Shown here one piece after another: positions 12,222 through 63,580 of a stretch of DNA of 64,000 nt. The stretch spans positions 186,001-250,000 of the forward strand of contig NW_026929981.1 in NCBI RefSeq assembly GCF_032062105.1, read 5' to 3'. The notes under the pieces were generated by a model. The model was not told where the DNA came from. It saw nothing but the letters and a program-made list of their open reading frames with translations, and searched no databases. Made by a program: the position numbers and the translations under genes. Within the stretch, counting starts at the first letter, position 1. Every line of letters starts with the position of its first letter. The DNA is from Saccostrea cucullata. Taxonomy: Eukaryota.

Positions 12222-15200
12222 TTAAACAAAAGTATTGTGCTCTCTATTCATATGTCCATAACACTCAGGGCTAGTCTTGAAAAACTCCATGCATATCCAG
12301 CAGATGTGGCTCTTACAATCTCGGCATTCCATGTGCTGACATCCGCCATTTTTTTCAATTCCAGCAAAACAGTTCGGGCACAATTTCCTGTTTTGTGGGT
12401 CTTGTCGCATCCATTCTCGAAGTCCTGTTTCATCATTTCCATTTTCCATCTGGTACATGGCACAAGATATACCACTATGGTATTCAACGTGGCACTTACT
12501 GCACACACTAGTTTTGCAGGCACTGCATACAACTCTCCCTCCAACTTTGCTGACTTTGTATACCATAGGGCAATCTGGAGTTATGCAGTATCGAATTTTG
12601 TCTTTGTTTTCCATGGCAAAATTCGATACAGATGAATTCAAAATGTTTTGAAGACTGCAGAATCCATATCTCGTCATATTCAAAAAATCTTTCCAAGCCC
12701 AGAGCATGTCGCATTGATTATGACAACATTTAACAGGAAAGTCCTTACTTCGAATAGCAGATTCTATATTCATCTTCATGCAATCCCTACAGTATGGATG
12801 GCCACAGGACTCCAGTCTGTAAATTTCACTTTCAGCAATTTCACAGAAACATATTCCACATTCTGGCTGATCAGAAGCTGCAGTAACGCTTTTTTCACGC
12901 AAACAATCCATGATCTCAGAAATGTTTTGGACAGCTTTTTCAACTGCAGCATCTGATCCCAACATTTTAATTCTGTGGTTTCTGTGATCAAGTTCCACTG
13001 TTGACAAATTTGAAGAAACTTTCAAACCGTTAAGATCTACACCATGCATTAGAATAACTGCTTTCATTAATCCTGGTGGTTTAGATTCCCCTTTCAGATC
13101 GATCACCCTCAGTTTGGAAGAGGACAATTTCTCGACATATTTTCTAATCTTTCCTACAGCTATTCTCCGGTCCCCCGCCCGACCATGCACGGATAATGAC
13201 GAATTTCTATGATCCAGCAAAATTAACGTTCCAGTCTTTTTCATAATCTTCTCAACCTTTTCTTGGCCGTCTCGGGTAAACAGATATCGAAGAGCAGGAA
13301 TCTTTTCCATATCAACAGTTTCACCCTCAAGCAATTCCTGTACCTTATTTCTTGTGCGGACCATGCTTTCAATGCTATCTGCATCAATATCTATCACATA
13401 GTTTTCATTTCTCTGAAGAGTAATAGTCAATCTTCTGTCAGTATTCTCATTCTTTAGTTTCTCCTGATACTTTTCAATATCACTCTGTACTCGTTTGTAG
13501 ACCTGGGATAGTACAAATATCCGAGTGTGTATTTCTGGGGTAACAGAAACGGCATGCTCCCCAATGAACATTCTGTTCCGTACCTTAGTACAAGCATCAA
13601 ATCCTTCCTCTGGGTCCTTGAATGTGACAAAAGCTTGATATATGAAGGAACCAGGCTTTGGCTCAATAAGAGTGACATTAAATTTATTCTGCCGAATTCC
13701 TGTGCACTCTCTAAATTGTCTCTCTATTCTTGTTCTCAGACTATACAATATTTGAGGTGTTGTGTTCACCTTTTCCCGTATAATGATGACTTTTCCTATT
13801 TCATTTTCTGAAATGTCAAATGTGTTCAAAAAACTTTCACGCAAGACATCCTCATTAACAAGATCTCCAAGACCCGTAACAAATAGTTCATTTGTTTCTT
13901 CATCCTCATCTCTTCCATTTTTATTTCCTCGTTTCACTCTTACTCGTTTTCCCCCAACCAAGAATTGATTGAATGCACTGTACATTACGATGTGGTCGAT
14001 TTTTTCTTGATCATGAATCTCAACAAATCCAAAACCTCTAGACTTCCGTCGGCACCAAACAAGCTTGGCTCTAAGTAAATCGTCTTCTTCACTTTTCCCA
14101 AAGCCCTTTGGTGGTTTTGCAGTAAATTCAAAATCACATTTTCCTTTTCTAGTAGCAATTACTGCAGTTTTTGCAAATTCAGGTTTTTCAAATATAATCT
14201 GTCCAAGGTAATTCTGATTACTGTTCTTAGAAGATTTGGGTATAAATGATTGAATGGATCCAAAACGTCTAAACCACTCCACCATATCTTCTTCAGAATC
14301 GAAAACTTGTGCCTCGCCGAAAATAAATACATTTTTATACTCATCTTGATATAACAAATCCTGGACTTGTCCACCTGCTCCAATGGATATTCTAACATTG
14401 AAAAACTCTGGAAGTAATGGATGTTCCACTGCTTCATTCCTTATTTTTTCTCTGATTGGATCTATCGCAGTTTTTAAAGTGTGTGATGAAATATCTGAAT
14501 CACCAATTGGCGCATAAATTGAAATTTCTCCCCTCTCACGATCTGCATCTATCACAAATATGGAATCTTCGCACTCCATCTTCAGATTATCTTGCATGGC
14601 TCTCACCTTGCTATATCGAGGTCCAACAAATTCTCTGTGAACTTGGACACCTACATATTCAGTCAAAACTGGTGCAACTTTTCGTCTTTCCACGGCATTA
14701 ATGTCAAAGTCCATGGAGCCCTCGGTTAACGCTTCCTCAACATCTTCATCTGCCACTGCTGTTATATTTAAAGCAAAGTCACGCGAGGTTTGCATTACCT
14801 TCTCAACTATAACCCAGTTAGGACAAGATGCAAGTGACTGAAATGCAGATGAAGGATGCATAATGACCTGCTGATTCTTGTCTATGAAGAAGTAACCAGC
14901 TTTTTCGTGTCCAAGAAAATGGCAAAGATTACTCTGAAATGATCTGAACAGCAGTTTCTGTAATTTTCTTTCCACGTCTTCAGCATCTGTAAATTCAAAT
15001 TTTATGTTGATGGATAAATCTCTCTTCAATATGAATAAAATTTCATTTGCAGCATCTCGAATGACTTCGCATTGCTTTTCCATTAATTGAATTGTCTTTG
15101 CACCATTTACCCTTTTGCTTTTCTGTAACATTGTGCCATTTTTTGTAAACCTCAAGGTTTGTAAAGTGGTCTCCATATCTGTGGCAAAATGGAACTTTAA

Positions 15201-18200
15201 GTTTGTCTGACTTTTCCTTTTCTTCTTTTGTACCCCCGCGATAAAATAAGGATCCAGAAACTGTGCATGACGCTGCGATGATAATTCCCTCTAACCCAAC
15301 ATTTGAGTCAATTGCATCATGGGTAAGAACTCCTAAACTTGGTTCAAATGGAAGTTTTGCAATCCACTTTCCCAATGGAGATATTTTTCCATCTTCAATA
15401 GCTCCAAGTTTATTCAGGTGTTGAAAAGCATTTGTCATTGACACTTTCTCTGGAGCCTGCACAAAGTCAAATTCTAATGGATCAACATTTAGTTGCAAGA
15501 GCTTCAGAATTGCATGACCCAAATGTATTTTCAAAATTTCTGGCACAGATGTTGGGCACATGATGTCGTAATCTTCCTTTGAATAAAGTCGATAACATTT
15601 ACCAGGGCCTGTTCTTCCAGCTCTACCTTTCCTCTGGTCAGCAGAACTTTTGGTAACTTTCACAACACGCAAGGAACTTACTTTCTTCTTTGGATCATAC
15701 AAAAGTTCTTTCACAGCCCCGGTATCAACTACATATTTTACACCAGGTATTGTTACTGATGTTTCAGCTACATTGGTGGCAAGCACAATTTTTCTCTTCC
15801 CTTTAGGAGGATCCTTAAATACTAAATTCTGCTCCTCTGTTTGAAGCTTACCATGTAGAGGCAAAATCCAGTGATCTTTTCTTCCCTTCAACAAGACATC
15901 CAGTTTCTCTGCACACTGTTCGATTTCTGCTTGGGATGTTAGGAAAACTAAAATGTCCCCAGATGGTTCCTTTCTGTGAATTTCTGCCGCTTTCTCGATA
16001 GCTTTGATCTCATAATCATCAACTACTTCTGCACCTGATGAAGGAATTAACCAATCAATTTCAACTGGAAACATCCTTCCAGAAACTTTAAGGACTGGAC
16101 AGAATTCGGGTCCTCCAAAATATTGCACAAAAACATCAGGAACAATTGTTGCAGAGGTAATAACCACTCTAAGTTCTGGTCTCTGTGGCAAACACTTTTT
16201 TATCATTCCAAGCAAAAGATCAGTATATACACTCCTTTCATGAGCTTCATCAATCACAATACAGGAGAAATTCATCAGTAGTGGGTCTTTTAGACACTCA
16301 TTCAAAAGCATATGATCAGTCATGTATAATACTTTTGTTTGCTTGTTCAGCTTTGCTTTCATACCAGTTTGATAACCAACAAGATCTCCTACATTTACCT
16401 TTAATTCAGATGCTACTCTTTGTGCCAGGCTCATTGCTGCTACCTTACGTGGCTGTGTACAGATGATTTTTCCAAGTGAACTTAGCTCAGACTCCAAAAT
16501 GTACTGCGTTATTTGTGTACTTTTGCCAGAGCCAGTTTCTCCAAGAATAACAGAAACTTGATTATTAAGAATTGTATCAATAATTTGAGTTCTTTTTGCA
16601 TAAATTGGCAATGCCTGTTCTAGTCTTGTACATTCCACATCAAACTGTTTCAATAATGAATCTAATTCTTTTTGTTGCATGTTTCCAGCTTTTAGACACT
16701 CAATTTTTTGGATAGTTCCAGACAGGAATGATTTGAACTCATTCTGTTGTTGCTCAAGTTCTGTGATTTTATCATTCAGAGCTTTTTTCTCGGCCTCTCT
16801 TTGTTCGTGAAGAGAAAAGTTGGTAAATTTTACTTTTTTCTTTGATGGTGCTTTGCATAAACTGGATATTTGGCCCTGTGTTTTTCTTTCTTTATCCTGG
16901 TGTTTTCCTAATACTTCAACAGTTTTTTCTTTGATATATTGCATCTTTTTGCTTATGTCCACTAGCTTTACTTTGGGAACAGTTTCTTTTTTAAAGTGGT
17001 ATCTAAAGTTTAACTGCAAACTATTTCTTCTCAAGCAACTTTCAAAGCTTTTGGCATTTACATCGCTTTTGAAAACCAAAACAACAGTCGTAATCTTCGT
17101 TTTAGGATTATTTTCAAATGAATCAATTCGAAATTGAACATCTGACACAATGCCAACGAGATGAGACAACAAATCATTCTCACCCTCTAATTGTTTCAAA
17201 ATGGTGAAGATGTATTTGACTGTTTCCTTGTCAGAATTTTGCTTACAAGCAACTGTTTCCACAGATTTACCATCTGTTTGATTACCACTCTCTCTTTTTT
17301 CTTCCTTATAGCCTTCCTCAGCTACTTGTTCTCCCATTTCTGTTTTTCTTCCTTTTAACTCTTTGTTCAAACTCGTTCGTGTTTTAACCTTGCTAATCTT
17401 GTCACATTTAGATTTCTGTTTAGTATTTGACTCCTTTGAGAAATTGGTATCTTTCAATGTGATAATTTCGCCTTCAAGGAGACAATTCCGCTTGGTTTTC
17501 TCTAGTTCCTTTCCTGGGTAAGGCGATATAACCTCTTTAACTCCTCTTGTTTCATTTTGTTTGCTGATATCTTGGGCTACTTCTATATCTTTGGCATGTA
17601 GTACTGTCTTACTTTCTTCAAAGTTATAAGTTGAAGTCCCTGCTCTTTCTTTGCTTGCATCACTAACTGGTGCATCCCCTTTGTCAATATTATCCATTAC
17701 TTCCTCTACATCATTAGATCTTTCGAATGAATTTTCATTCTTAGTTGCAGCTCTTGCAGTCAAAGTGCCATCATTAAATACGACAGGACTTTGATCCATT
17801 CCTACAGGGTGTTTCTCAGTCAAACTGATGGTATGTAAATCTGTTTCCATATCATGTTGGAATATCCATTCTGGTTTGTGAGCACTTGCAATTTTGGTTT
17901 TGCTTTCTTTGCATTTCTCTTTTATGTTAGCATTTCTACTTTCCTGCATTGCCCGTCTAAATTTCAGTTTTGATTCTTCTACCTCAATAGGTGACATGTT
18001 TGTTTCAAAATCAGAATTTCTTTTTTTAATTTCTCTTACTTTGCTGCTCATTTTTTCAATGTATTTGAATGAATTTTTCTTCTCTTGTTGCTCAACTTTA
18101 CTTTCTTTGTTTTCACTCTCATTAGCAACAGTTTTATTTGCATTCCCATCTTTTAACGTAATATCATCATGTCTTTTACCATAAGTATTTTTAGCTATTC

Positions 18201-20236
18201 CAGTCGCCTTTGGCATATCCTGACATTCAAAATCTTCTACTTTTTCTAAATTGGCTTCTTTTGTGGTGGATGACTGTTGCCTCCCTTTATATATGTCCAT
18301 TTCTTCTTTGTCCTCTGAAGATTTTTCTCTTGCTACCCTGTAAACCATTGGAATGATTGTGTCTCTTTGAGAAAGTTTGTTTTCTTTAATCTCTTGTAGC
18401 TGACCAATGAATAGAGGTGCAACAAATTCCACATGGTTTCTGCTGTCAGATCTTCTTTCATCACTTGAGTTGCTAAGGGGTAAGTCCTTCTTGTCTGATG
18501 TTTTCATATGATCATCATGAGATTCCTTCATTTCTAATAATGTTTTCTTCTCATCAAGTTTCTCAATAGATAGCATTTTGCCCAGATCTCTATATCCTTT
18601 TTCATCTTTTGACTCAGTTGTAAGTCTTTCCTTCAGCTCTTTAACTTCTTTGAAAAGAAAGCCTTGATGGTTTTCTTTCTTCTTTGACATTGTTTCCTCT
18701 CTTTTGTCAGACTGAGGTAAACACTTACTTTCCTTTTTTGTTTTACTGTTCCTTGCCATTGCAATACAAGCTCCTTCATTCCCAGTTTTGTGTCCTTCTT
18801 CTGTTACAAGTTTGCTTTCAGTTGTCTCTTTTACATCCATCCATTTTATTGTAACCTTTGGGAAATCTTTCCAACCATCACAGTTTCTTTGACCATCTTC
18901 ACTCCAGTATTTAGTCTCTGATTGTTTTTCTTCAACATCTTTATTTGTAGGCCTACCTTTCATTGAATATCTGAAATGAACATTTTCATTTGGGAATATG
19001 TGTACTTGTTTTTCATTTTCTTCATATGAACCATTAATTTTTCTCTCTTTTTCATTGTAACTTACAACTTTGCCATTTGATCTAAGATCATCTTGAAATG
19101 AACTGATTCTAGTACTTTGGGATCTTTCTTTTTTTTCAGTAGATTCATATATCCCATTGTCTTTCCTATGTAAACCTTGCATAAGGGACACAGATTCTGT
19201 AGCTGTATTTCCTTCTATAACATTTGAAAAAGCTCGAGGCTTCCTTGTGTGAAATGTAGTTTGGTCACAAGGAAATTTATTACATTTATCTTCAGAGCTT
19301 TGGATGGACGAAGGCTCAGATAACTGTTTTTCATACTTCTTATAAGGTTTATTCAAATTATCTACTTTCTCTGTGTTTCTACAAGGTATCTCTGACAGTT
19401 CGGATCTATACTTGGAAGAAAGAAATACATCTGCATTTTTTTGGCTACAATTAGATTTTCTCAGAATTTCCTTTTCTTCCAATTTTTCAATTGCTCCTGT
19501 TGTTTGCTCATTTGGTTTGATAAAATGTCTGTCACTTAATCTCCTTCTTTCCCTCAATGGGTAGGCTGGATACCCTGTTGAGTATTTCAGATTTGGTGAG
19601 TGTTGTGCTGATGATTTATACACATTACTTGGATTATAAGCAATCTTTACTCTCTTCAACTGTTGGAGATATTTTCAAAACAGTTCCATCTCTTTGCCAA
19701 GTTCTAATCATTCCTTTTGTAGATTGAAATGTACTTTTATCACCAGAAGGAGTGCTTTCTCTAAGTTTATCTTCTATGCTTTGAAGTTTGGAGGAAGAAT
19801 GTTCAGGTTTCTGTATTCCATACTTCTTGGAACAATTTTCATAAAAATTATTTACTATCTCTGTGTCCTCACCAGATCTCCTTAAAAAATCTGATCTGTA
19901 TCGAGAGGAAAGTAATACACTGGCATCTTTTTGGCTATAATATGATTTTCTGAGAATTTCTTTTTCATCCCAATTTCCAGTAGCTCCTGTTGCTTGCCTT
20001 TTGGACTCCATTAAACTATTATCATTTGTACTCTTTCTTTCCCTAAGTAAAGAGTCTGAATACCTTGATGTGTGTTCCACAGCTAATGTAGGAGATGAGG
20101 GCAATCCATGCACATTCCTTGATTTATAAGAATCCATGCTTCTTCTTTCTACTGAAGGAATCCTCACATCAGTACCAATTCTTTTTGTTGGATCTACTGG
20201 TCTTGCTGCCTCTTCTTTTGTTGTAGTTTGGCCCAT
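12222..20236 (-). CDS. Paralogue A: DEAH-box RNA helicase-RRM/KH-RBR E3 ligase (DEAH11/12-like), ~2670 aa after correcting two 1-nt insertions (~19641, ~15065)
   Basis: Helicase motifs GETGSGKST, CTQPRKVAA, DEAHER, SAT, LATNVAETSVTIPG, QRKGRAGR; OB-like MHPSS; RNP1 RGFGFVEI and RNP2 LFVTGL; RING1 CGIC...CGHPYCRDC, IBR CITPDC, RING2 CPNC...GGCQHMECRDC. Three ORFs join in register (8015 nt minus 2 = 2671 codons). May instead be a recent pseudogene. Confidence 0.88.
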
Positions 20237-25443: not shown

Positions 25444-25494
25444 GTCAGGTAGTATACCTGTGACCCGAACTTGTGAACAAATTTACTATTTTAC

Positions 25495-25745
25495 CTGTTT
25501 ACGTCCATCGGCATTGTTTTTACATCAATTATTTCATCACTTGGTCTATGAACAACTGCAGTTGTCATTTGAAGACAATATGTTTCATGTTTTCTGAAAT
25601 ATATATTTACGATTCTACGAAAATGGCGTACTTTCGGTTTCTCTTCCAACGGCCAAATTCAATCGGCAATCCTCGGCTGACTCCGCTCCGCTCCAGAGGC
25701 ACGAGTCATCCGAGGAACTCCGAGTCATAAATTTGGCGGGAAACG
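25495..25745 (-). promoter_or_regulatory. Putative promoter and first exon of paralogue A with ISRE/IRF-E
   Basis: Donor CAG|GTAAAA after 25495; GAAACCGAAAGT on the minus strand at 25630-25641; locally CpG-rich; E2F-like TTTGGCGGGAAA at ~25732 and YY1-like AAAATGGCG at ~25620. Confidence 0.55.
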
Positions 25746-27965: not shown

Positions 27966-30900
27966 CTAATCCTGAAGTACACGTGAACTTCTAACTCTGC
28001 AGAGCAAACCAAAATGAAACATGGTATCCAAAATTTCTTCTCGATCCTTTTTCACTAAAAAGTTATAAGGTTTTGAGTAATGAATTCTACTTCTCAGATC
28101 TTCCACCTTTGAACCTTCAACCAAGTGTGTAAGATGTGTTTTATCCATATCCAAACGTGTGAAAATAATCTGCAATAAATAAAAATAATGTGCTCAGTAT
28201 GTTTATAAATTACCATCATAAGCAGTTCATTGCTTTTGTGCTGGTTATTAATTACATTAATTTTAGTTTTTTTTGTGATTACTGTATATTAATAAATGTC
28301 ACATTAATTATTGCCAATTAAACACGTTCGCTGCGTTTGTTTGTGTTGTGTGTCTGGTGTGAATGTTTTGAGAGGTCATGTGACATTGGTTATTCTTGTA
28401 TTTACACGTGCTTCCGGTTAGGTGACCTAATGTGACCTTACTGCTGACCAATAACTGACCGTTTTTATCTAATTAATATGCATGTTTTAATATCTGCGCT
28501 CAGTATATAAGCACTGTACCCGCCAAATTCTTGACCCCCACGATTTTTGCCTTTATGGTAGAAGACAGATTTACATTATATTATGTCAAAGATTTACTTG
28601 GTTTAATATTTAACTGGATTCCAATTTCCTTTATTATAATCATTATGTAAACGTATTTTTTATTTTATTAATTAATTCCGACAGCAAACAATCATATAAT
28701 TTATGTTTTGTTAATGTCTGTTCTTAAATGTAAAGTATTCGTCTTATGTGTGTATTGTGTTGTGAGAGTGTGTTTGATTTATACTTTGTAGGTTTATTAC
28801 TATATGCACATAAATAAATACAAAACTACTCCTACAAAAGACCCAAATTTGAGAGAAACACCAAGACCCCTTCTACTCTTATAATGTCCCTTAGTATTCC
28901 AATGAGTATTCTACGTGTACATGACTAGTTTTTCCCCTTTATTTCAAAGTAAAAGATTATAGAGATCAGTTGCAACAGGCTAGCGGCATAGGTTTATGAA
29001 CAGCATCTTTGTGGACCTTAAAACAAATTTTTTATTTCAAAGCGACATTTTTGTCAGTTGAAGCAGTCAATTTTGCCGGTCACCGGTTCTTAGGGAAAAC
29101 ACTGAGTCAGTCATCCAAAAAGATTGACTGACAACTCACTAATTATGATCAGAAAAGGACACAGAATCTTTACAGTAATAAAATAAAATAGAAATACTAA
29201 CCATGGTCTTCACACAAATTATTCCTAAACATGTAGTTCCTATGACAGATTTCTTGGTTTCCAGAAGAAGCTCTCCCCCATGTCGTCCCAGCAGTGTCTC
29301 TACAGATTGACCTGTTAACATCAAGTCTCTGATATTGAAATCAGTCGCAGTGTGTCCAGCATGTGCATGTGACCATATCTTTACCTGAAATCATATATTT
29401 TGAATGTGCTTATACTTCTAAAATCTTAAAACTGTATAAATTTGATAAACGAAAAGTCTGTGATGACAAAGTTAATTTACAGTGTACTTTATATTTTGTA
29501 ATAACAACAGAATTAAAATGCAAACCAAAAAGGTTGAATTACTACAGGGTCATGAAATTTCTTAAGATTAGAGAAAATTTTATTACAAACTGAATATTCC
29601 AAAATGTGCTCCATATAAACATACAGAGATGTTTTAAAAGTGATGACTTTGATTTAGCTGAAGCATTTTTTCACAAAATAAATAGAATATACAATGTTAC
29701 TGTTTACAGCTAGCAAATATTCAAAATTTTTATCAAAAATATATACCACTTAGAACTTCCATACGAACCTCTCCAACAGAAACTGTAATAAGAGATGCTC
29801 CTGCTTTTTCCATTGTTGAGTCTCCCTGCAGGCTGTATCTTAGATCAGGAACACTAGCTGTTTCTGTTCTATTAAGTGTCATTTGTACGGTCTGTGAAGC
29901 ATCTCCTCTCCTGCAAAATTTAAGTTAACTCTCAAACTTCATTTAAAAAAAAAAATTCTTTCAGAATTATGATATAAAGAAATAATATTCAGCTGATATT
30001 TAAATAAATTAAATGTGCTTCAAATAAGTGGGGTGAATTTCATTTTTTTCTCATTATATCTGATTCATAATAAAGATTGCCATGAAATATTTGGGGAAAC
30101 ACAACTTTTCTTGTTTTTATTTTAAAATTATTATGAAAACAATAGAACTGAAAATAGTAAAACATCATGCTGTCCTAGAGTTTCTTTCTTGAATTGACAT
30201 TTAAAAAAGAAGACGAAGCAATACAAGAAATATATCTAAACAAAGTTTGATTAATTTTTGAATTTGTTTCAAGCATAAAATAAAAACTCACACAGCATTT
30301 ATCAGGAAAATCTTGCTGAATAAAGTCAAAAGCTGACAGAATTCTCCTTTTACTCCAATTCTTCTTTCAGAAAACAACTCTTTTATAAAGTCAGAATAAT
30401 ACTGAACATACTCCAAGATCCCTGCATGCCAAAGACTGAAAAGATGCCTAAAAAATTAAAATAATTTTTTTAAAATTAGTGTTGTAACGCTAGCTGCAGA
30501 GTATCAAAAATCGTTGCTAAAAGTACATGTAGCATGTCAGTGACAATGGATAGAAAATTTTAAAATTTATAGCAATAATTTTTTTAAAATATGTATTTTA
30601 ACAAATAGTGTGTCTTTCAACATTAAAAAGGACATTCCTGGACCTCTATTTTTCTTACAAATAGCACTCAAATTTCCTCACTAAACATATTAAAATGAAG
30701 CTGGTCCCACAGATTTTTACTGACATATCAAATTTATTTCTGAGGGTGAGTGAGGATATCTGAATATTTCATAATTAACCTTTAGTCCTTATTTAAATTA
30801 CAGATGTACTGATCATATAATGGATTGTAAGCTACAATTTGATAATTGAATCAGATAATAAAATTGGGCCGATTTGCAACACTAGTCATTTAGCATTGTT

Positions 30901-31666: not shown

Positions 31667-31736
31667 TTCTTTGCATCTACATGGTATAAGATGTTTGAAT
31701 TGTTTCTGAACTTTGATTACTTTCTCAATCTAGTTT

Positions 31737-31747
31737 ACTTTCACTTT
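31737..31747 (-). promoter_or_regulatory. IRF-E-like site AAAGTGAAAGT ~70 bp upstream of the nuclease-like gene ATG
   Basis: Plus-strand ACTTTCACTTT; matches the IRF1-type AAGTGAAAGT core. Confidence 0.5.
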
Positions 31748-32118
31748 GTCGTGGATACGCGTTTATCAGTAGAGCACGCCCGATTGAAATTAATATACAT
31801 TTTGAATTTCTTAAAGTAATATACGCTATAACGTGCGCCATTTTAAAATACGGCTGGAAATTTATATATTTTGTTAACCAATAAAAGTTACGAAAATGCT
31901 GTAAATTACACCATTTAAATAAAATTCGTTATAAAGTTATCAAATTATAATTATTTATTACCCTGCAAGGAGAATAATGTCTATTTTTAAGTAAATCCAC
32001 CACGTGACGCCGTCGCTGCTTTTAGATTGATAAACAAACACGGCGTCAAGAAAGCGAGGTAAGCCCTTTGAGATACAACTCACTTTTGACATGGATGGCG
32101 TGTTACTATTAATATAAC

Positions 32119-46400: not shown

Positions 46401-48688
46401 TTAATACGTCCCTTTTGCTCACCGAAGGTTTCCTTTCTTGTTTTACATTTTTCATTTCTTTCCTCTTTATGATGGCTTTGTCGACTGGGGTTCCGATCAG
46501 TTTGGTATTCAAATACACAATCTTGGGCTGCAGTGTTGCAAGAATTGATAGGTTTGCATGTACTTTTTTCACCTTGCTGTTTGACTTTTGTTTCCATTCG
46601 TTCTCCTGAATCAACATTCGGTTTACTTATGTCTTTATCCTGAATGATATTGTGTAACTTTTGAGTGGTTATTTTTACCATACCAGTGTTTCCTTTTATT
46701 TTGGAATCAATTTTTCCATCACAACTCGATTTACATAGTGATTGTACCACATTTGTAAGTGATTTTTCTGGTTTTTCATCAGTCTTTTTAAAATATTTGT
46801 CTTCTTCTTCCTTTGTTTCTGTGTTTTTGCATTTCTTGTCTCTATTTTCTTCAACAGCAACCTCCACTTTTTCATCATGCTTAAAACTGCCTTGTACAGA
46901 ACATTTATTGCTGTCTTTTGACTCCTTTTTCGTAGAATGTGAACTTGTTACGGCGCTTCCTACGGGAAATGACATGGGTTTAAATTTGTGTTTATCTTGT
47001 TTAACACTGGCTACATTTTGTCTTCCATTTGTTGACTTGTCTTTTGGTTCAAAGTGACTTTGAATTACTCTTGAAGATTTAGCATTTGTTTCTTCAATCC
47101 GTTGGATCAATTGATCTGTTTTAAAATCAGAGATCTCGTTAGTTTTACCTGTACTGCCACCCTGTTCTTGAGGTTTTGTTGGATTACACTCTTTCAGATT
47201 TCCCTCTACTGATCTGACGTTTCTATTTTGAACTAAATCTGGTTCTTGTTCTATATTTTTAACTTTTATGAAATCTTGCCATTTTTTAAACTCTGGATCT
47301 ACTTTTTTCCAACCACATCCGTCGGCATATACTCCTCTGCAATGATATGTGGGGCTTTTCTCTCTGGATTGTTGAAATCTTTTTCTTGTTTGGTTTTCAA
47401 TAGGTTGTATGTCTTCTTCCTCTACATCTCGAAACTTGATTTTTCTTTTATCTGCTTTACTACTTCCACCAGGTAATTCTTTGGACTTCTTGTAATATCC
47501 AGAAAAATCACTGGTTTGGTTTGATTCTTCTGAATAGTTCATATCTGCTTGTTGTACAATTCTTTCCACTGCAAATTCATTTTGCTTCACTGCATTCTGT
47601 GAGACTACAAATGGATTAGCAGAGGCACTGTTTTTGTCTGGCTCAAGGTTTTCACTTCGTTTCATATCTTTCATGTCACTTTCTAATTTTATTTCCCAAG
47701 TAGGAGGGGTTCGCGGTTCCCATTTCATACCATACTGTGGAAAATGAGGAACTTCTTTGGTTGCATTGTCAGATAATGTGCAAGATGTACTATTTTCATC
47801 TGGTTTTATGCTTTTATTTTCCTTAATGTCATTTAAAGCAACTATAGAGTATTTGCCTCCATGTTGGATAACTGAAGTATTTTTCAGCTCATTTTTGTCT
47901 TTTCTTACCGAAACTACAGAGTTATAATTACTTAAACCTTCTTCCTTAAGACATTTTTGACCATATAAAGGTTTAGGTGAATTAAAACTCATTTTTGCTT
48001 GGTTTTCCACATAGTGATCTTCTCCCATCACATCTCCAGAATCTGAATTTCTAACATATTTGGAGCTTAAACTAGGCATTGTACAATCATTCTGCACACC
48101 TAAGATAGGATTTCCTTGACTACATTTTGCAGAAAATTCAGTTTCATATTTTTTATCCCTCATCTGAAATCTCGAATTTTTACTTGAAAGCATGTTATAT
48201 TGAATTTTTTCATGGGATGGTATGTTTGAAACATCCATGCGAGGATTATTATCATTGTCCTCAACAGTTTTCACCCTCAAACATGCATTTCGATAGTTTT
48301 CTACTGTAGGAACCAAAGGATTCGAGCAAGTCTTTGTATCTTTCCTTACAGTCGGTGGATATACCTCAAAATCCATGTAGGAAATATTTTCAGTGCCTGT
48401 TACTTGTTTATTTGGTATTAGTGTTATTTCATCACTTGTAAGACCCTCTTCCCACGTTGTACAGGAGGGATACCCTGGTGATTTAACCTCCTCCAGTTCT
48501 CTAGCTGGGGGCGATGGCGATATTTTCAGATGCGCATTATTTGATTTATAAGAATGAAAATCCTCCCTTAATGTAGCCAAATTATTCGTGTACGACTCGT
48601 CTGTGGTCCCAGTTGATACTTTAGCCACTCTTTCATTGACTTGGCCTTCTGACTTAGTCGCTTTCTTTTTTGTTGAGCTTTGGCCCAT
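40470..48688 (-). CDS. Paralogue B: DEAH helicase-RRM/KH-RBR E3 ligase, ~2739 aa after correcting a 1-nt deletion at ~44905
   Basis: ORFs 48688-44900 and 44834-40470 join as IQKIESAKHN/VTQKDTDYLLKRYEIECTRLEQALPIYARR, colinear with paralogue A. Full helicase motifs I-VI, RNP1 KGFAFVEM, RING1-IBR-RING2. 8219 + 1 nt = 2740 codons. Confidence 0.88.
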
Positions 48689-52072: not shown

Positions 52073-52520
52073 AATGTTAAATTAAATAATACATGTGATA
52101 TTAAAAGATGTCCCATTCATTAAAGAAGAAAATCATAGTTCGGTCCAATTTGAATGATTTTTTCAATAACAAAGCTTAGTTTTTCGCATTTCGAGACGAG
52201 GGTGTGTGAGGTTATCGTCATTATTTAAGCAAATGTATATCATTTACTAGACCGGAAAAGACTGAAAACAACATTTTTGCTGTACCTACATAATTATGCA
52301 CTCCTCAAACTAAATCGATAAAGAAACAAACCTTGCCATAATACCAGGGTAGGCATGAATATAAAATAAGCAGAATAAAATCATGTCCCAAAAATTCTTG
52401 TAATGATTTTATAGTCTAATAAAAGAGGCATATTTACCCTATAATGTTTCCTTTGCGTTTATGGAGAGTAGTTCCAATATCAATGTAAATGTCATCATGC
52501 CTGTTGTTTAAATATCCTAC

Positions 52521-52631
52521 CTCAACAAATAGGTGATCTGACTAAACTTATGCATTTTACACAGTCTGATAATTTCTTGCATTGGTTGCACTTTGCTCCT
52601 CAATTCATTGAAAATAATTACTTTCACTTTC
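52521..52631 (-). promoter_or_regulatory. Putative first (5'UTR) exon of paralogue B with IRF-E GAAAGTGAAAGT
   Basis: Donor GAG|GTAGGA after 52521; ACTTTCACTTTC at 52620-52631. Confidence 0.55.
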
Positions 52632-53243
52632 TGTTCTGACTTCCGAATAGCAGTGAAAAAAAAACTCAATAATTAAAACCTCATGATCAGCTCGTCTCAA
52701 AACCAAACATATAAAGTCTGGTTTATTGTGATCCCTATTAAGGAGGCTGTGTGTCAACAAATTAACCATCATTTATAACTTAATTTTTAGATATGATATA
52801 TCTTAAGGTGTCAGCTATCATTTTGCAAAGAAAAAAATTCATATATTTTTGTTTTAAGAAAATTATCATTTTTTTATAGTTTATATACAGATTTCTACGA
52901 AAGCCCAGAAGGCTCATTCGAGATTCGAGTTTCAAAGTACGAGATTCGAAATTCGAGATTCGAAATTGATCCAAACTAACCAATCAGAAGCTCAATTCAT
53001 TGAAAATAATTATTCGAAATTCAAGATCCAAACTAGCCAATCAAAAGTGGGTTCAACAAATGATTACTCCCCTTTATTATGTTTTTACTATGAAGAAATT
53101 GTTTAAAATAATTATAACAAATTTCATTTAATTATATTACAATGCAAGAAAGTGTGTAATATAAGGAAAAACAATTTTTAATTTAAAAGAAAGATATATC
53201 AATCTATATTATAGCTCGTCTTAAAATTAAAAAGATGGTTTAT

Positions 53244-53850: not shown

Positions 53851-53884
<34 letters not shown>

Positions 53885-54327: not shown

Positions 54328-54360
<33 letters not shown>

Positions 54361-56548: not shown

Positions 56549-59500
56549 CTAACCGTATGTGTAATGAGTTTGGGCCATATGGCTATAACAATCGGTACTT
56601 GTTTTGAAATAAGCTTTGCAAAACCAACAAATATGACATTTACACTGAGAACATGTCATATGATTACAGCCATCATATTTTTCTATACCTGTATAGCATT
56701 TTGGACAAAGATCTCTATTCAAAGTATCACGACGCATCCATTCACCAAGCCCAGTCTCGTCTAGCTGCTTTTCTTTCTGAAACACTGCACAGGATTTGCC
56801 CGTGTGGTATTCGACGTGGCACTTGCTACACAGTGCTGTGTGGCAGAGGAAGCACACAAACCTGCCTCCTCCCTGACTGACCTTGTACACCATCTGACAA
56901 TCAGGTGTGATGCAGTACCTAGCTTTATCTGTATTCTGGGCGGCGTAGCAGGAAACCGAAACATCTATCAACGTTTGAGTCGTACAGAATCCGAATTCCT
57001 TCATGTTATTAAAATCACTCCAAGCCCAGAGCATATCACAACCTTCATAACAGCAACGTAGGGGAAACTCTTTTGTGCTTATAGCAGAATCCAAATGCAA
57101 CCTCACACAATCCCTGCAGTATGCGTGACCACAAGATTCTAGTCGGTAGAGATCACATTCGGATATGGAGCAGAAACAAATTCCACATTCTGGATCGGTG
57201 GATGGTATTTGGTGTTGATTGTCTTCCATCAACACTTTCGTAAGTGCGTCAATGTCATTAATTGCCAACTGTATTGCTCCATCGGAGCCTAACATTTTAA
57301 TCTTATGTCTTCTATGGTCAAGTTCTACGCTGGACAAATGTGATTCCACTTTCAATCCTTGAAGGTCTACACCATGCATCTGTATAATTCGTTTCATCAA
57401 TCCAGGAGGCTTGGTTTCGCCCTTCAAATCAATCCACCTAATCTTTGAGGAGGCCAGTTTTTTAATATATTTTTGGATTTTTGAAATTGCTGAAGCCCGA
57501 TCATTCTCTTTGCCATGAACGGAAATAGTCGTATTTCTGTCGTTCAAAATTACAAGAGTGTGGGTTTTCTCCATTATTTTCTCAGCTTTGCTCCGTCCGT
57601 CCCTTGTGAACATATATCTTATACTTGGATTATCTTCCATTTTTAAGATTTGACCTTGAAGAAGATTTTGTATCTTGTCCTTATCATATTGTCTACGCTT
57701 TCAGCTTCTATATTCAGAATATAGTTACCCGTTGTGTTCTGCTTTATATCAACAGTTACTTGATCTTTCTTAGCTTTAACACAAAAATCTTTGATATCTT
57801 TACTAACCCGTTTGAATACCCGTTCCAGTACATATAAACGAGTGCGAATTTCTGGAATAACAGTAACGACATTGCCAGTGATGAACAACTGGTTTTCGCT
57901 TTGCAATTTAGCGCAGACCTCATCACCTTGTTCTGCGTCAGTAAAGGTTATAAAACCGCTGAAGTTATAGTCTTGCGGTCTGGGTTCTCTTATATGTACA
58001 TTGAATCTGTTTGGATTCACGATTTGTGAAATATGCCGTTCAATTCTTCTCTTATGTGTGTCCATTATTTCCCTTGTTGTAATTACCCTCTCGCGTGGTA
58101 CAAAGATTTTTCCAATTTGATTTTCGGGTATCTTGAAGGCCTCCACAATTCCTTCTCTCAAAATGCCTTCATTGACAAGATGATCGAAACCTTGAACGTA
58201 CAATTGGTCAGCGTTCTCTCTACTTCGACTAATTTTAACATTTGATCTACCAACTGAGACTTGTATCATCGTACTTAAAGTCAAAACGGTTTCCAGTGTT
58301 TCCGAATGCATAATTTGCACGAACCCAAATCCTCGAGATTGTCTGCGACACCACATTATTTTGGCTTTAAAAGCATCAGAATCCTCTGTTTTCCAACCTG
58401 GGGGTTTAATGTGAACTTTAGAAGCACTGTGACCTGATACAGTATACGTAACTGCTTTCTTCGCAGATTCGCTATTCTCAAACACTACTTCACCACGGTA
58501 TCTTTGAGTAGTATTTGCTGGAGATTTCTTTTGAAACTTTCGAATTTCGCCAAACTGTTTCATCCATTCCACTAATTCTCCGTCAGATTCAAATTCATCT
58601 GCTGAGCAGTATACATAAACATTGTTATAATCATCTTCACACAACAAATCTTGTATTAATCCACCTGGTCCAATGGATAGTTTGACATTATAACACCTAG
58701 GATAGATAGGAATGATAATCTTCTCCTTTCTTACATTTTCTCTAATCTGATCAAGTTCCATTTTCAGCGTTTCTGTTGCCACTTCATCCTTATCTGCAGG
58801 TGCATAAATAGTAAGTTCGCCCTTATTTCTGTCTGCATCAATTACAAAGACTGAATCTGTATTTTCATTTTTTAGCTTAGTTTCGAGATCCTTTGCATGT
58901 TTCCACCCTTTACCCACAAATTTGTACAGAGTATGTGATCCAATGTATTCTGTATAAATTGGTTCAATTCTTTTCCTTTCAATTCCTGTTATGTCAAACT
59001 TTATTTCATTTCTTTTTAAGGCTTCATGTACGTCGTCTTCATTTACTTCTGTTACATTAACGGCAAACTCTCGAGATGTGTTCAAAACTTTTTCAATTAT
59101 AACCCATTTTGGATATAATGCAAGAGACTGGAAAGATGCAGACGGATGAACAGTCATTTGCTGGTCTTTGTCAATGGAATAATACCCAGCCTTTTCATGC
59201 CCAAGGAAGTAAGAAAGGTTGCTACGAAAAGCCTTGAAGATAAGCTTTTGTAAATTCCTCTCATTCCTGCCTACATCTTTTAATTCAAACTTTATTGTTA
59301 TATTCATTTGATTTTTCAAGATGAATCTGATCTCGTTTACAGTGTCTCGAATACTTCTCATGGCCCTTCCATTGATGGAGTTATCCAAGCACCATTGACC
59401 TTTCTCCTTCTCGGGAATGTAATGCCATGTCTTAAAGACACTTAAAAATGTGAAATGGTCACCTTTGCTATGACAGAAAGGAATTTTTAATTTGTCACAT

Positions 59501-61737
59501 CTATCTTTCTGTTCTTTAGTTCCAGCTCTGTAAAACAAGTTCCCACTCACTGTGCATGATGCCGCAATTATGATAGCATCTAAACCAACCTTCATCTCAA
59601 TTGCATCATGAACAAAAACTCCCAAATTTGGGTCCAAGGGTAGTTGAGCAATCCAGCGCCCTAGATCTGTAATTTTCCCATTTTTAACTGCTGCAAGATC
59701 GACCAATTGCTGAAAGGCTGTTTCCATTGAATTATTTGGTGGTGCCTCGACAAAATCGAAATCAAGAGGGTTCACATTCAGTTGCATCAATTTCAGAATG
59801 GCATGACCGATATGAATTCTCAAAATTTCTGGAATAGAACAGGCTGCCATGTTGTCATAAACTTCTTCGGAATAAAATCGGTAGCATTTCCCTGGGGCCG
59901 TTCTCCCCGCTCTTCCTTTCCTTTGATCTGCGGAACTTTTTGTTATTTTAATAACTCTTAAAGAGTTCACTTTTTTGTCGGGGTCATATTTCATTTCTTT
60001 TGCAAGCCCAGTGTCAATCACATATTTCACTCCAGGAATTGTTACAGAAGTTTCTGCCACATTAGTGCTAATTACAATTTTTCTTTTACCCAGTGGCGTT
60101 TCTTTGAAAATTTTGTTTTGTTCCTCTGTTTGAAGTTTACCATGAAGTGGCAATATCCAGTGATCAGTTCTACCCTCAAGTTCCCACTGCAGTCTTTCTA
60201 TACACTTTTCAATTTCCAACTGACCTGTGAGAAAAAGTAGAATATCACCAGGGGGTTCTTTATCATGGATTTCTAACGTCTTTTCAACTGCTTTTCTTTC
60301 ATATTCTTCCAAGTCTTCATCTTCAGAACATGTCTCCCATTCTATATCGACGGGATACATTCTGCCAGGTACTTTAATCACTGGACAGTCTTTAAAATAT
60401 CGAACAAAAAGTTCTGGATCAATTGTTGCAGACGTCACAATGACACGCATGTCATATCTCCGAGGTAAACACTTCTTTATCATGCCAAGCAAAAGGTCCG
60501 TGTATATGCTTCGCTCATGTGCCTCATCAATAATAATGCAGGAGTAATCATTTAACAAAGGATCTTTGATGCATTCATTTAACAGTGTATGGTCAGTCAT
60601 GTACACTACTTTTGTCTGGTCAGAAACTTTCTTCTGAATTCCACATTGATAGCCCACTATATCTGCAACAGTAGACTTCATTTCACTGGCGACCCGCTGT
60701 GCAAGACTTGCAGCTGCAACTTTTCTAGGCTGTGTGCAAACAATACGGCCATTGGAAGGCAGTTTAGACTGCAAAAGATATTGTGTTAATTGTGTGCTTT
60801 TCCCAGATCCTGTTTCGCCAAGAAGGATGCATACTTGATTTTGTAAAACAGAATTGACTATCTCTGAGCGCTTAGCATAAATAGGCAGTGCTTGCTCTAG
60901 CCTTGAAAACTCTATGTCAAATTCCCTGAGCAGTTGATCTATGTAGTCTTGTCTTACAGAAATTCCTTCAAACTCATTTAATCGTCTTTTGATATCTTCT
61001 ACAGAACTTTCAAACTCGAAAAGTTGATTTTTAAGTTCCAAAATTTTACTTTCAAGTGTTTTTGTCTGCATTTCTCTCTTTGTCTGCATTTGGAATTCAG
61101 GAACGGGAATATAATTTGTCTTTTTCTTGGTTTTCTTTGTTCCAAGAAAATCTGATAATTCTTGTTTGGTTTTCGTAATTTTTTCTTGATGCATTCCCAT
61201 TATATGGATACTACGTTCCTCAACATTCTGTAGATTTTTATCAATAAATTCTTTACTCACTTTTGCAACTTCCTCTCTTAAAAAACGGCAGCAAAAACCT
61301 AGACTTCTAGTTTGTCGCATCCACAGCTGAAACTGTTTATAGGCATTGTTGCTTGGGAAATGAATCCAGATGGAAGCAGATAATCCATTAGGATTTGTTG
61401 TGAAAAATTCAATGTTAAATTCGATACCTGATGGCAACTCTCTCTTTTTTAAGTGTTCCAAGAAAGTTTTTTCTTCTTTGAATGGGTGGTAAACAATGAG
61501 ATTGTATGTCGGCCCTGGTTCAGTTAGTAATCTTTCACTTTTCTTGTGCAGCATTTCTGACGGCTGTTCCTTGTTTTTGACATGTTTGGGTGTTGGTGTT
61601 GGTGTGTCTCTCGACTCCCCCTGAGGAGGTTGATCCTTTGTGTCTCTCGGTCTCTGATCTCTGTAATTTCTGCGCCCGCCACCACCTCGCCTCTGATTTC
61701 CTCTCCCTCTGTTACCACCGGAACGTCTTCCATCCAT
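56549..61737 (-). CDS. Paralogue C: DEAH helicase-RRM/KH-RBR E3 ligase with RGG N-terminus, ~1731 aa after restoring a 7-nt deletion at ~57672
   Basis: ORFs 61737-57643 and 57640-56549; all helicase motifs, RGFGFVQI, RING2 CPKC...DGCNHMTCSQC. The junction MIRTR/QNLLQGQILKMED aligns with paralogue MVRTRNKVQELLEG with 7 nt missing. Confidence 0.88.
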
Positions 61738-63069: not shown

Positions 63070-63420
63070 GTTATAATAAAATCAGAATGTTAGCCTATTT
63101 TTCAACTCGATGTGATTTTAGAACGTTACAAAATATACTCCTTATACATATGGATTATCGATATAACATACTGGTATACCATAAATTAAATTTTACCGGG
63201 TCAAAATGTAACAGAGAATATAAAGGAGCTAAATAATTAATAAATCCCATCTTGATTTTCTACTGTAAATGTGTGGTATAATTTTGTAGATATTCAAAAG
63301 TTTTAAGACGTCAATTGCTAAAGATAAATGACGAATAGACTGTCATTTCAATATCTATACTTGATGATTATTGATTTTAATTTTTAAAGCTTATTTGTCA
63401 AATAAAAGCAATGCACATAC

Positions 63421-63580
63421 CCTAAATTGTCTTTTTGTCTATCAGAAGTCCATATATATTATCCGACAGATAGCAAGTAACTGTTGAAATACAGGTGATG
63501 ATGTCATTGGAAATCAATGTGCTTGTTTCGTTTTGAAAATAGAAGCATTGTGCGAATTTCAGAAAACTTGTTTCACTTTC
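63421..63580 (-). promoter_or_regulatory. Putative first (5'UTR) exon of paralogue C with IRF-E GAAAGTGAAAC
   Basis: Donor AGG|GTATGT after 63421; GTTTCACTTTC at 63570-63580; second weaker site AAAACGAAAC at ~63525. Confidence 0.55.

What the first reader, a model, noticed from the sequence alone, without database searches (positions are those of the whole stretch)
12222..63580. Candidate IRF-inducible antiviral locus: tandem RNA helicase-RBR ubiquitin ligases plus an embedded PD-(D/E)XK-like gene
Seen: three co-oriented paralogues that fuse a DEAH helicase, RRM/KH modules and an RBR ligase; a fourth co-oriented gene with a nuclease-like motif; IRF-type sites at all four 5' ends; strongly diverged N-termini. 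Known: this architecture is that of plant DEAH11/DEAH12 and I know no vertebrate counterpart. Nucleic-acid-activated or ATPase-coupled ligases (ZNFX1, RNF213, TRIM25) are innate immune effectors, and oysters mount an IRF-dependent response to dsRNA. Inference: these are single-chain RNA sensor-ligases expanded as an interferon-stimulated-gene-like cluster. I am not aware of a functional description of such a system in animals.
Basis: partly seen in the sequence, partly recalled or inferred. Interest (0 to 1): 0.85.

Follow-up and report, generated by a model that had tools for sequence, protein, structure and literature searches.

The report
Oyster RNA helicase–ubiquitin ligase cluster
This stretch of hooded-oyster DNA holds three neighbouring genes that each fuse an RNA helicase to a ubiquitin ligase, plus a nuclease-like gene between them. 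All carry interferon-response-type promoter motifs, which makes them good but still unproven candidates for antiviral defence genes.

Summary
The window is Saccostrea cucullata DNA. Three co-oriented minus-strand genes (A 12222-20236, B 40470-48688, C 56549-61737) each encode a DHX8-like DEAH helicase, RRM and DEAH11-type KH domains, and an ARIH-like RBR ligase with its catalytic Cys. They belong to the known "Helicase/Plant I" RBR subfamily (plant DEAH11/12). RefSeq already labels animal members "DEAH12-like", so the architecture itself is not new. The fourth gene, D, has five exons (27966-31666). Its family is undescribed, is found in bivalves and a nemertean, keeps a PD...EVK motif, and models as a PD-(D/E)XK-like fold. 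Each helicase gene has a conserved upstream block with an ISRE-type site 100-150 nt before a conserved splice donor. The A site is also kept in Magallana gigas. A RefSeq isoform of D starts in B's first exon. The order C-B-D is syntenic in S. echinata. The cores are under purifying selection (dN/dS about 0.15), and B's long polar N-terminal extension evolves almost neutrally (about 0.8). Each helicase gene has one frame break in this assembly. I found no expression data, so inducibility and an antiviral role remain inference.

The parts
12222..20236 (-). Gene A (RefSeq LOC134282661, 'LOW QUALITY PROTEIN', 2319 aa). It has a long polar N-terminal extension, a DEAH helicase, RRMs, two KH domains and an RBR. 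The coding sequence has no intron. It carries one frame change in the conserved core, and a possible second one in the 5' extension if the ATG at 20236 is the start.
   Evidence: ORFs. Pfam. 100% identity to P0001 over 1373 aa. Locus L003 is identical to the window.
14739..16590 (-). Gene A helicase core (DEAD, Helicase_C, HA2, OB). Motifs GSGKS, DEAH, SAT and QRKGRAGR are intact.
12252..12884 (-). Gene A RBR (RING1-IBR-RING2). RING2 has the catalytic Cys and the His two residues after it.
25471..25656 (-). Conserved block upstream of A. An ISRE-type site lies at 25630-25641, and the putative non-coding exon 1 ends at a conserved GT donor near 25495.
   Evidence: 80% identity to S. echinata. 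Alignments (site and flank also in M. gigas, 5.1 kb upstream of its ATG). Coordinates.
27966..31666 (-). Gene D (RefSeq LOC134282663). Five coding exons at about 31666-31172, 30446-30291, 29909-29748, 29387-29184 and 28169-27966. N-terminal Ser-rich region with a basic patch, then long helices, then a C-terminal PD-(D/E)XK-like domain.
   Evidence: tblastn of relatives P0122 and P0138. Motif. Model and fold searches.
31734..31748 (-). IRF-type site about 70-80 nt upstream of D's ATG. It is not kept in the S. echinata orthologue. An identical 15-mer lies at -54 of a Pinctada family member.
40470..48688 (-). Gene B. It has a ~1068-aa polar, fast-evolving N-terminal extension, a conserved pre-helicase region, a DEAH helicase, RRMs, two KH domains and an RBR. 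The coding sequence has no intron and carries one frame change. In RING2 the catalytic Cys is kept, but the His two residues after it is Arg.
42963..44810 (-). Gene B helicase core. The nearest solved relatives are DHX8/Prp22 (E 1e-125 over residues 1-622).
40500..41130 (-). Gene B RBR
52287..52648 (-). Conserved block upstream of B. An ISRE-type site at 52620-52631 is identical in S. echinata. A first exon ends at a GT donor near 52521. RefSeq isoform X2 of gene D also uses this exon (residues 1-21 from 52582-52520).
56549..61737 (-). Gene C, the short-N-terminus type (~1727 aa). It is the 1:1 orthologue of S. echinata LOC133204662 (83% aa identity). The coding sequence has no intron. It carries one frame change, seen as a single 7-nt gap against the intact S. 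echinata gene.
59035..60867 (-). Gene C helicase core
56585..57217 (-). Gene C RBR. It aligns to ARIH2 residues 127-337 and keeps the catalytic Cys and His.
63392..63659 (-). Conserved block upstream of C. An ISRE-type site lies at 63570-63580, and the putative non-coding exon 1 ends at a conserved GT donor near 63421.

Best explanation
The locus holds three old tandem paralogues of the eukaryotic "Helicase" subfamily of RBR ubiquitin ligases (the plant DEAH11/DEAH12 family). A gene of an undescribed PD-(D/E)XK-like nuclease family lies between them.

Shown here:
- Each helicase-ligase protein is one chain. It has a ferredoxin-like pre-helicase domain, a DHX8/Prp22-type DEAH helicase core with intact ATPase motifs, RRM and KH RNA-binding modules, and an ARIH-like RING1-IBR-RING2 with the catalytic Cys.
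- Each gene has an ISRE-type site 100-150 nt upstream of a conserved splice donor. That donor ends a small first exon, which is followed by a 1.7-5 kb intron and one very large coding exon.
- Gene D can be transcribed from B's first exon, according to a RefSeq isoform model.

Inferred:
- The genes are driven by IRF-family factors as part of the oyster's interferon-like antiviral programme.
- The helicase and RNA-binding modules engage RNA. This is coupled to the RBR, which like other RBRs is probably autoinhibited until engaged. The ligase then ubiquitinates itself or RNA-bound proteins.
- D supplies a nucleic-acid-cutting activity from the same regulatory unit.

Identity of the genes: confidence above 0.95. 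The IRF-inducible antiviral role is the part rated below.
For: Domains and motifs.

Family membership and wide spread in invertebrates. The subfamily is described in PMC2904391.

ISRE-type sites lie in the blocks conserved between S. cucullata and S. echinata upstream of C, B and A. A's site and its flank are also kept in M. gigas at a similar distance from the ATG. Outside the three blocks, the sense strand of about 38 kb of non-coding DNA has only 5 such sites. One site within 200 nt of each of three donors is therefore far above chance; my rough estimate is below 1e-4.

The first exon in B's block is used in a RefSeq model (P0138).

D: the PD...EVK motif is kept in 40-46 of 47 family members. 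The model has pLDDT 80.7. Fold hits are to mitoribosomal proteins that a review calls repurposed endonucleases, and to Dna2, Cas4, BbvCI and many viral PD-(D/E)XK, Cas4, YqaJ and alk-exo proteins. IRF-type sites lie close to the start codons of 3 of 4 D-family genes examined.

The order C-B-D is conserved in S. echinata.

Oyster IRFs activate ISRE reporters in mammalian cells (PMC5869526).
Against: - No expression data were available, so inducibility is untested.
- The catalytic cores evolve under plain purifying selection (dN/dS 0.08-0.17).
- The family is ancient and present in plants, where a cotton DEAH12 acts in fibre development rather than immunity (PMC13407882).
- C's ISRE block was not found upstream of an O. 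edulis C-type gene.
- D's own site is not kept in S. echinata.
- Two other D-family genes have no helicase-RBR gene within 10 kb.
- The fold matches for D are individually weak (E 1e-3 to 0.2, TM about 0.2).
- Each helicase gene carries a frame change in this assembly.
- B lacks the RING2 His.
- No paper found links the animal family to immunity.
Confidence: 0.42

Rival explanations
1. The three genes are housekeeping RNA-metabolism or RNP-surveillance ligases, the conserved cellular role of the Helicase RBR subfamily. The GAAA-repeat promoter motifs serve basal or developmental transcription, not an antiviral response.
For: The subfamily is ancient and occurs in plants and unikonts. The cores are under strong purifying selection and orthology between Saccostrea species is 1:1. 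The helicase core is closest to the spliceosomal DHX8/Prp22. A plant member acts in development. Transcript contigs for the oyster C-type are seen in very many sequencing runs (469 member sequences in one cluster), which fits broad expression.
Against: ISRE-type sites sit next to the first exon in all three paralogues and are conserved across species. Similar sites occur at D-family 5' ends. The subfamily has been lost repeatedly in animal lineages, which is unusual for a core housekeeping factor. Paralogues have multiplied in molluscs, and the N-terminal extension evolves almost neutrally.
Confidence: 0.35
2. In S. cucullata the cluster is decaying. The frame changes are real, and A, B and C are recent pseudogenes or null alleles.
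For: Each gene has one frame change. In C it appears as a 7-nt gap against the intact S. echinata gene, and the break zones of B and C hold no long homopolymer, so simple homopolymer miscalls do not explain them. No S. cucullata protein for C came back although it falls within the searched length range. B has lost the RING2 His.
Against: Apart from one break each, all pieces stay open for 363-1538 codons in AT-rich DNA. dN/dS against S. echinata is 0.15-0.17 on both sides of the breaks. RefSeq treated A's break as a sequence-quality problem ('LOW QUALITY PROTEIN'). The assembly is fragmented into more than 12,000 contigs, judging by the contig number. The orthologues in S. echinata, O. edulis and M. 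gigas are intact single exons. Loss of the His is shared with S. echinata B and with about 30% of family members, so it is not decay specific to this copy.
Confidence: 0.12
3. Gene D is a bystander. It is a member of a dispersed, multi-copy bivalve gene family that happens to lie between two paralogues, and it has no functional tie to them.
For: At least five D-family genes in S. cucullata and six or more in S. echinata lie on different contigs. The O. edulis and Pinctada members examined have no helicase-RBR gene within 10 kb.
Against: D's position between B and A is the same in S. echinata. A RefSeq isoform of D starts in B's ISRE-bearing first exon. D-family 5' ends carry IRF-type sites of their own.
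Confidence: 0.45

Closest known systems
RBR 'Helicase / Plant I' subfamily (Arabidopsis DEAH11, DEAH12; cotton GbDEAH12)
   Same: Same order of parts in one chain: DEAH helicase core, RRM and KH modules, C-terminal RING1-IBR-RING2. The Pfam models built on DEAH11 (KH_DEAH11, KH_DEAH11_2nd, RRM_DEAH11) match. Sources name the relatives 'DEAH12-like'.
   Different: These are animal members with intronless coding sequences. A and B carry 800-1070-aa polar, fast-evolving N-terminal extensions that have no relatives. B-type copies replace the RING2 His. They have ISRE-type promoters. The only functional work I found is on plant development.
ARIH1/ARIH2 (Ariadne RBR ligases)
   Same: Best solved relatives of the RBR part (E 2e-13). 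The alignment covers RING1 to RING2, including the catalytic Cys-x-His.
   Different: No Ariadne domain and no cullin-linked context. Here the RBR is fused to a helicase.
DHX8/Prp22, Prp43/DHX15 (DEAH/RHA helicases)
   Same: The helicase core aligns end to end (E 1e-125 to 1e-110) and has all ATPase motifs.
   Different: Those are spliceosome or ribosome-biogenesis factors activated by G-patch partners. They have no ligase domain.
ZNFX1, RNF213, RIG-I/TRIM25 (vertebrate NTPase-plus-ligase antiviral effectors); comparison from my own knowledge
   Same: They work alike on paper: an NTPase that engages nucleic acid or pathogen surfaces, coupled to ubiquitin transfer, and expressed as an interferon-stimulated gene.
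   Different: No homology beyond generic helicase or RING folds. None came back as a hit in any search here, so this is an analogy only.
PD-(D/E)XK nucleases (Cas4, Dna2 nuclease domain, BbvCI, viral alkaline exonucleases) and mitoribosomal mL37/mL65
   Same: Gene D's family keeps a PD...(24 aa)...EVK motif on consecutive strands. Its model hits these proteins in both fold libraries. mL37 and mL65 are described as repurposed endonucleases (PMC8998825). That the top chains are mL37 and mL65 is from my memory of the entries.
   Different: No sequence-level match to any Pfam, PDB, PADLOC or PHROG family. The family has a long N-terminal helical region, and the fold scores are weak.

Membership tests
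RBR Helicase/Plant I subfamily (DEAH11/12) | DEAH-box helicase and RBR supradomain in one polypeptide, with the helicase N-terminal to the RBR | tested here: met
   One uninterrupted 1454-aa ORF of gene B holds DEAD, Helicase_C, OB, RRM, KH and IBR/IBR_1 in that order. A and C show the same order across their pieces.
RBR Helicase/Plant I subfamily (DEAH11/12) | DEAH11-type KH domain (PF24471) above Pfam's gathering score | tested here: met
   82.5, 83.9 and 82.7 bits in A, B and C against a cut-off of 27
DEAH/RHA helicases | Motifs I (GxGKS/T), II (DEAH), III (SAT) and VI (QRxGRxGR) | tested here: met
   GSGKS, DEAH, SAT and QRKGRAGR are present in A, B and C
DEAH/RHA helicases | C-terminal winged-helix, ratchet and OB extension | tested here: met
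   The alignment to DHX8/Prp22 covers residues 1-622, E 1e-125. On its own, Pfam OB_NTP_bind reaches its cut-off only in A, and HA2_N is below cut-off in all three.
RBR E3 ligases | RING1-IBR-RING2 with the catalytic Cys in RING2 | tested here: met
   IBR scores 41-50 bits (cut-off 24.3). The alignment to ARIH2 covers residues 127-337. The Cys is present in A, B and C and in 114 of 120 relatives.
RBR E3 ligases | His two residues after the catalytic Cys (the general base in Parkin, HOIP and HHARI; from my own knowledge) | tested here: inconclusive
   Present in A and C. It is Arg in B and Tyr in S. echinata B, and is replaced in 34 of 114 relatives.
RBR E3 ligases | Ubiquitin thioester formation and transfer | not testable with these tools
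   Needs biochemistry
Interferon-stimulated-gene-like (IRF-driven) genes | ISRE/IRF-E site at the promoter | tested here: met
   Sites at 25630-25641, 52620-52631 and 63570-63580 lie in cross-species conserved blocks next to first-exon donors. D's site at 31734-31748 is not conserved in its orthologue.
Interferon-stimulated-gene-like (IRF-driven) genes | Induction by dsRNA, virus or IRF activity | not testable with these tools
   No expression data are reachable, and no paper was found
PD-(D/E)XK nuclease superfamily (gene D) | Conserved D ... (D/E)-x-K on adjacent core strands | tested here: met
   P 46/47, D 41/47, E 40/47, K 41/47. The D lies at the start of one strand and E-x-K at the end of the next in the model. 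The window's D has PD in exon 3 and E|VK across intron 3.
PD-(D/E)XK nuclease superfamily (gene D) | Restriction-endonuclease-like alpha/beta fold | tested here: inconclusive
   Many named PD-(D/E)XK, Cas4, YqaJ, alk-exo, Dna2 and BbvCI hits, but at E 1e-3 to 0.2 and TM about 0.2, because the whole 359-aa model was searched
PD-(D/E)XK nuclease superfamily (gene D) | Metal-dependent nuclease activity | not testable with these tools
   Needs biochemistry

The most novel reading that the evidence does not exclude
Oysters, and perhaps many invertebrates that kept the Helicase-RBR subfamily, use these proteins as IRF-induced, single-chain RNA-engaging ubiquitin ligases. That would be an antiviral effector or sensor class with no vertebrate counterpart. 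Paralogues would be specialised by fast-evolving N-terminal extensions and by loss of the RING2 His, and they would be co-regulated, partly from a shared promoter, with a previously undescribed PD-(D/E)XK nuclease family.
Probability: 0.3. Interest if true: 0.8.

Novelty: new member of a known kind. Interest (0 to 1): 0.58.

Why it matters
The Helicase subfamily of RBR ligases has been known from sequence for about two decades, but I found no described function for it in animals. Conserved ISRE-type promoters on three paralogues, and a nuclease-like neighbour that can share one of those promoters, give a concrete hypothesis that can be checked against expression data. The hypothesis is that part of the invertebrate interferon-like response uses a helicase-coupled ubiquitin ligase that vertebrates lost. 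This would widen the catalogue of nucleic-acid-linked ligases beyond ZNFX1, RNF213 and RIG-I/TRIM25. It is also relevant to viral disease in farmed oysters. Gene D's family is separately worth describing as a new PD-(D/E)XK-like family in lophotrochozoans.

Tried and rejected
- ISRE-type sites close to the start codons: none within 2 kb of the ATG of A, B or D, and the shorter AANNGAAA core is at background density. The simple "site just upstream of the ORF" reading was dropped in favour of distant first exons.
- Introns as the cause of the ORF splits: rejected. Paralogue and orthologue alignments run straight through with no intron-sized gap.
- Homopolymer miscalls as the cause: not supported for B and C. 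This stays open.
- Pfam, PDB sequence, PADLOC and PHROG searches for gene D's family: nothing significant.
- Pfam and PDB searches for the N-terminal extensions of A and B: nothing.
- Fold search for the pre-helicase domain: only generic ferredoxin-like matches.
- Linkage of D-family genes to helicase-RBR genes outside Saccostrea: not seen in the two loci examined. Two further look-ups failed because the proteins were minor isoforms.
- Conservation of C's ISRE block in O. edulis: not found.
- A transcript to define splicing in M. gigas: the contig fetched was colinear with the genome, so it was uninformative.
- Literature links between DEAH11/12-like proteins and invertebrate immunity: none found in five searches. 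One of them was too broad to be useful.
- Rfam: no RNA family in the window.
- ORF fragments at 833-1474 looked to me like the tail of a retroelement, but Pfam gave no support.

Full report
**Source and make-up.** The window has 34% G+C, no N and a CpG observed/expected ratio of 0.62. Locus L003, fetched through the RefSeq protein LOC134282661 of Saccostrea cucullata (assembly GCA_032062105.1, contig JAVVLV010012118.1), is 100% identical to window 2222-29182. The window is therefore hooded-oyster nuclear DNA.

**The three large genes.** All long ORFs lie on the minus strand in three groups: A at 12222-20236, B at 40470-48688 and C at 56549-61737.
- Pfam finds the same series in each: DEAD, Helicase_C, (HA2_N), OB_NTP_bind, RRM_1/RRM_DEAH11, KH_DEAH11_2nd, KH_DEAH11 and IBR/IBR_1.
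- KH_DEAH11 scores 82-84 bits against a cut-off of 27.
- One uninterrupted 1454-aa ORF of B runs from the helicase to the RBR, so the fusion is read directly.
- Helicase motifs I, II, III and VI are intact in all three.
- The helicase core aligns end to end with DHX8/Prp22 (E 1e-125).
- The RBR aligns with ARIH2 and ARIH1 from RING1 to RING2, including the catalytic Cys.
- The His two residues after that Cys is present in A and C. It is Arg in B and Tyr in the S. echinata B orthologue. Among the 120 best relatives the Cys is kept in 114, and the His is replaced in 34 of those.
- The ~190 residues before the helicase are shared by all three genes. In C they model with pLDDT 82 as a ferredoxin-like beta-alpha-beta-beta-alpha-beta domain plus a long helical hairpin. 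No specific structural neighbour was found.

**Frame breaks.** Each gene is in more than one ORF piece.
- Paralogue and orthologue alignments run straight through the junctions with no intron-sized gap. The breaks are therefore frame changes, one in each conserved core.
- A may have a second break in its 5' extension. There, an old ~145-aa tandem duplication lies in two different frames.
- In C, the only gap against the intact S. echinata gene that is not a multiple of three is 7 nt long.
- The break zones hold no long homopolymer.
- RefSeq labels A "LOW QUALITY PROTEIN". The assembly is highly fragmented.
- The orthologues in S. echinata, O. edulis and M. gigas are intact single-exon coding sequences.
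- dN/dS is equally low on both sides of the breaks.
- I cannot tell assembly error from a recent lesion.
Every search used single pieces by reference.

**Family and distribution.** The best relatives are oyster proteins: A itself; O. edulis at 75% identity; M. gigas at 72%; and S. echinata at 83% for C. After them come scallops, mussels, clams, gastropods, a chiton, decapods, krill, Lingula and corals. Many are named "ATP-dependent RNA helicase DEAH12, chloroplastic-like". No vertebrate protein is among the 120 best. Marín's classification already lists a "Helicase (Plant I)" RBR subfamily present in unikonts and bikonts, with several independent losses in animals (PMC2904391). The architecture is therefore known. 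What is missing is any functional description in animals. Five literature searches found none. The one functional paper found concerns cotton fibre development.

**N-terminal extensions.** The first ~800 residues of A and ~1068 of B resemble neither each other, nor C, nor any of the 40 best relatives. They have no Pfam or PDB match. They are polar: 58% K/E/S/T/N/D/Q, with 21-22% hydrophobic residues against 33-35% in the folded parts.

**Selection and synteny.**
- In S. echinata the order is Metallophos gene, C orthologue (1733 aa), B orthologue (2768 aa), then D orthologue, all in one orientation as in the window.
- An A orthologue was not reached within the fetched DNA.
- Nei-Gojobori estimates, computed piece by piece, give dN/dS of 0.15-0.17 for C and for B's C-terminal third against S. 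echinata.
- A against B gives 0.08-0.15 over the helicase-to-RBR region.
- B's N-terminal extension gives 0.80, with window values from 0.49 to 1.21.
- The cluster is thus old and conserved. Only the extensions evolve fast.

**Gene D.** The 211-aa ORF at 31031-31666 is exon 1 read on into its intron.
- Relatives P0122 (359 aa) and P0138 map five exons between 31666 and 27966. P0138 is this gene's own RefSeq isoform X2 (LOC134282663).
I used natural full-length relatives instead and read the window's exons one at a time.
- The family has about 50 representatives at E below 1e-3. They come from oysters, Pinctada, Argopecten, Mytilus and the nemertean Lineus, and all are unnamed.
- There is no Pfam, PDB-sequence, PADLOC or PHROG match.
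- A 47-sequence alignment gives an AlphaFold model with pLDDT 80.7 and pTM 0.80. It has a disordered Ser-rich start with a basic patch, long helices (residues 67-206) and a C-terminal alpha/beta domain.
- In the family, P234 is kept in 46 of 47 members, D235 in 41, E260 in 40 and K262 in 41. The D lies at the start of one strand and E-V-K at the end of the next. This is the classical PD-(D/E)XK arrangement.
- The window's D has PD in exon 3, and E|VK split by intron 3.
- Foldseek against the PDB puts two mitoribosomal chains first. From memory these are mL37 and mL65, which a review calls repurposed endonucleases (PMC8998825). Next come Dna2, Cas4 proteins and BbvCI.
- Against viral models, at least 15 of the top 50 hits are named PD-(D/E)XK, Cas4, YqaJ or alkaline exonuclease.
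- Individual scores are weak (E 1e-3 to 0.2).

**IRF-type sites.**
- GAAANNGAAA occurs 24 times against 9.3 expected. Thirteen of these are in coding DNA rich in Lys and Glu codons.
- None lies within 2 kb upstream of the ATG of A, B or D. The short AANNGAAA core is at background density there.
- Comparison with S. echinata shows one conserved non-coding block upstream of each helicase gene. Each block carries an ISRE-type site followed 100-150 nt later by a conserved GT donor.
  - C: site at 63570-63580, donor near 63421.
  - B: site at 52620-52631, identical in both species, donor near 52521.
  - A: site at 25630-25641, donor near 25495.
- A's site and its flank recur 5.1 kb upstream of the M. 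gigas A/B-type gene, again followed by a good donor.
- That the B block holds a real first exon follows from RefSeq isoform X2 of D. Its first 21 residues come from 52582-52520 before it joins D's exon 2, skipping B's coding exon.
- Outside these blocks the sense strand has five such sites in about 38 kb of non-coding DNA. One site within 200 nt of each of three donors is therefore far beyond chance.
- D's own 5' end has an IRF-type site at 31734-31748. Its S. echinata orthologue has a different, Rel-like motif there. However, an identical 15-mer lies at -54 of a Pinctada family member, and a similar site at -14 of an O. edulis member.
- Oyster IRFs are reported to activate ISRE reporters (PMC5869526).

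**Reading.**
- Identity is settled. These are members of the Helicase RBR subfamily, plus a gene of a new PD-(D/E)XK-like family.
- The proposed mechanism has three parts: RNA engagement by the helicase, RRM and KH modules; coupling of that engagement to release of an autoinhibited RBR; and ubiquitination of the protein itself or of RNA-bound proteins. This is inferred from what the parts do in other proteins.
- The antiviral, IRF-induced role rests on cis-elements, on gene multiplication in molluscs, on repeated loss of the family elsewhere, and on the fast-evolving extensions.
- It is opposed by strong purifying selection on the cores, by the family's age, and by the plant member's developmental role.
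- I put the antiviral role at about 0.4. The housekeeping alternative is close behind.
- Whether D belongs functionally to the cluster is about even.

**Limits.** No expression data could be reached. Transcription starts are inferred. The fold evidence for D used the whole model rather than the domain alone. The absence of vertebrate relatives was judged from the top 120 hits only.

Noticed in passing
window 52520-52582 (-) and 27966-30455 (-): RefSeq isoform X2 of gene D (P0138) starts in the first exon that lies in B's ISRE-bearing block and splices over B's entire coding exon into D's exon 2. B and D can therefore share a promoter.
   Followed up: partly
window 40500-40640 (-), RING2 of gene B: The His two residues after the catalytic Cys is Arg in B and Tyr in the S. 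echinata orthologue. The same position is K, N, R or Y in 34 of 114 family members that keep the Cys. This is a recurrent change that may mark a functional subclass.
   Followed up: partly
window 19180-20236 (-): The 5' end of gene A holds an old tandem duplication of a ~145-aa unit (37% identity) whose two copies lie in different reading frames. RefSeq starts the protein downstream of both copies.
   Followed up: partly
window 9534-10792; 20438-21302; 22575-23169; 51127-51757: Four tandem arrays with units of 168, 146, 165 and 148 bp. The last two are related to each other and inverted, and similar arrays lie in the intergenic DNA of the S. echinata locus.
   Followed up: partly
window 833-1474 (-): Open fragments with a Cys/His knuckle. 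From memory they resemble the C-terminal tail of a non-LTR retroelement protein. Pfam gives no support.
   Followed up: partly
window 27155-27380 and 34782-35665: Two blocks with 77-81% identity to S. echinata but in inverted orientation relative to the surrounding synteny. They are probably shared mobile or repeated elements.
   Followed up: no
L010 (M. gigas contig from SRR327420) against L009: In an older M. gigas contig the N-terminal extension of the A/B-type gene is called as two ORFs (612 aa and 1914 aa). The recent assembly gives one 2081-aa product. The extension may vary between individuals or assemblies.
   Followed up: no
L008, and O. edulis proteins P0204 and P0218: O. edulis has two C-type genes with nearby gene numbers (LOC125682926, LOC125682931) and an A/B-type gene on the same chromosome. 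Several linked paralogues therefore also occur outside Saccostrea.
   Followed up: no
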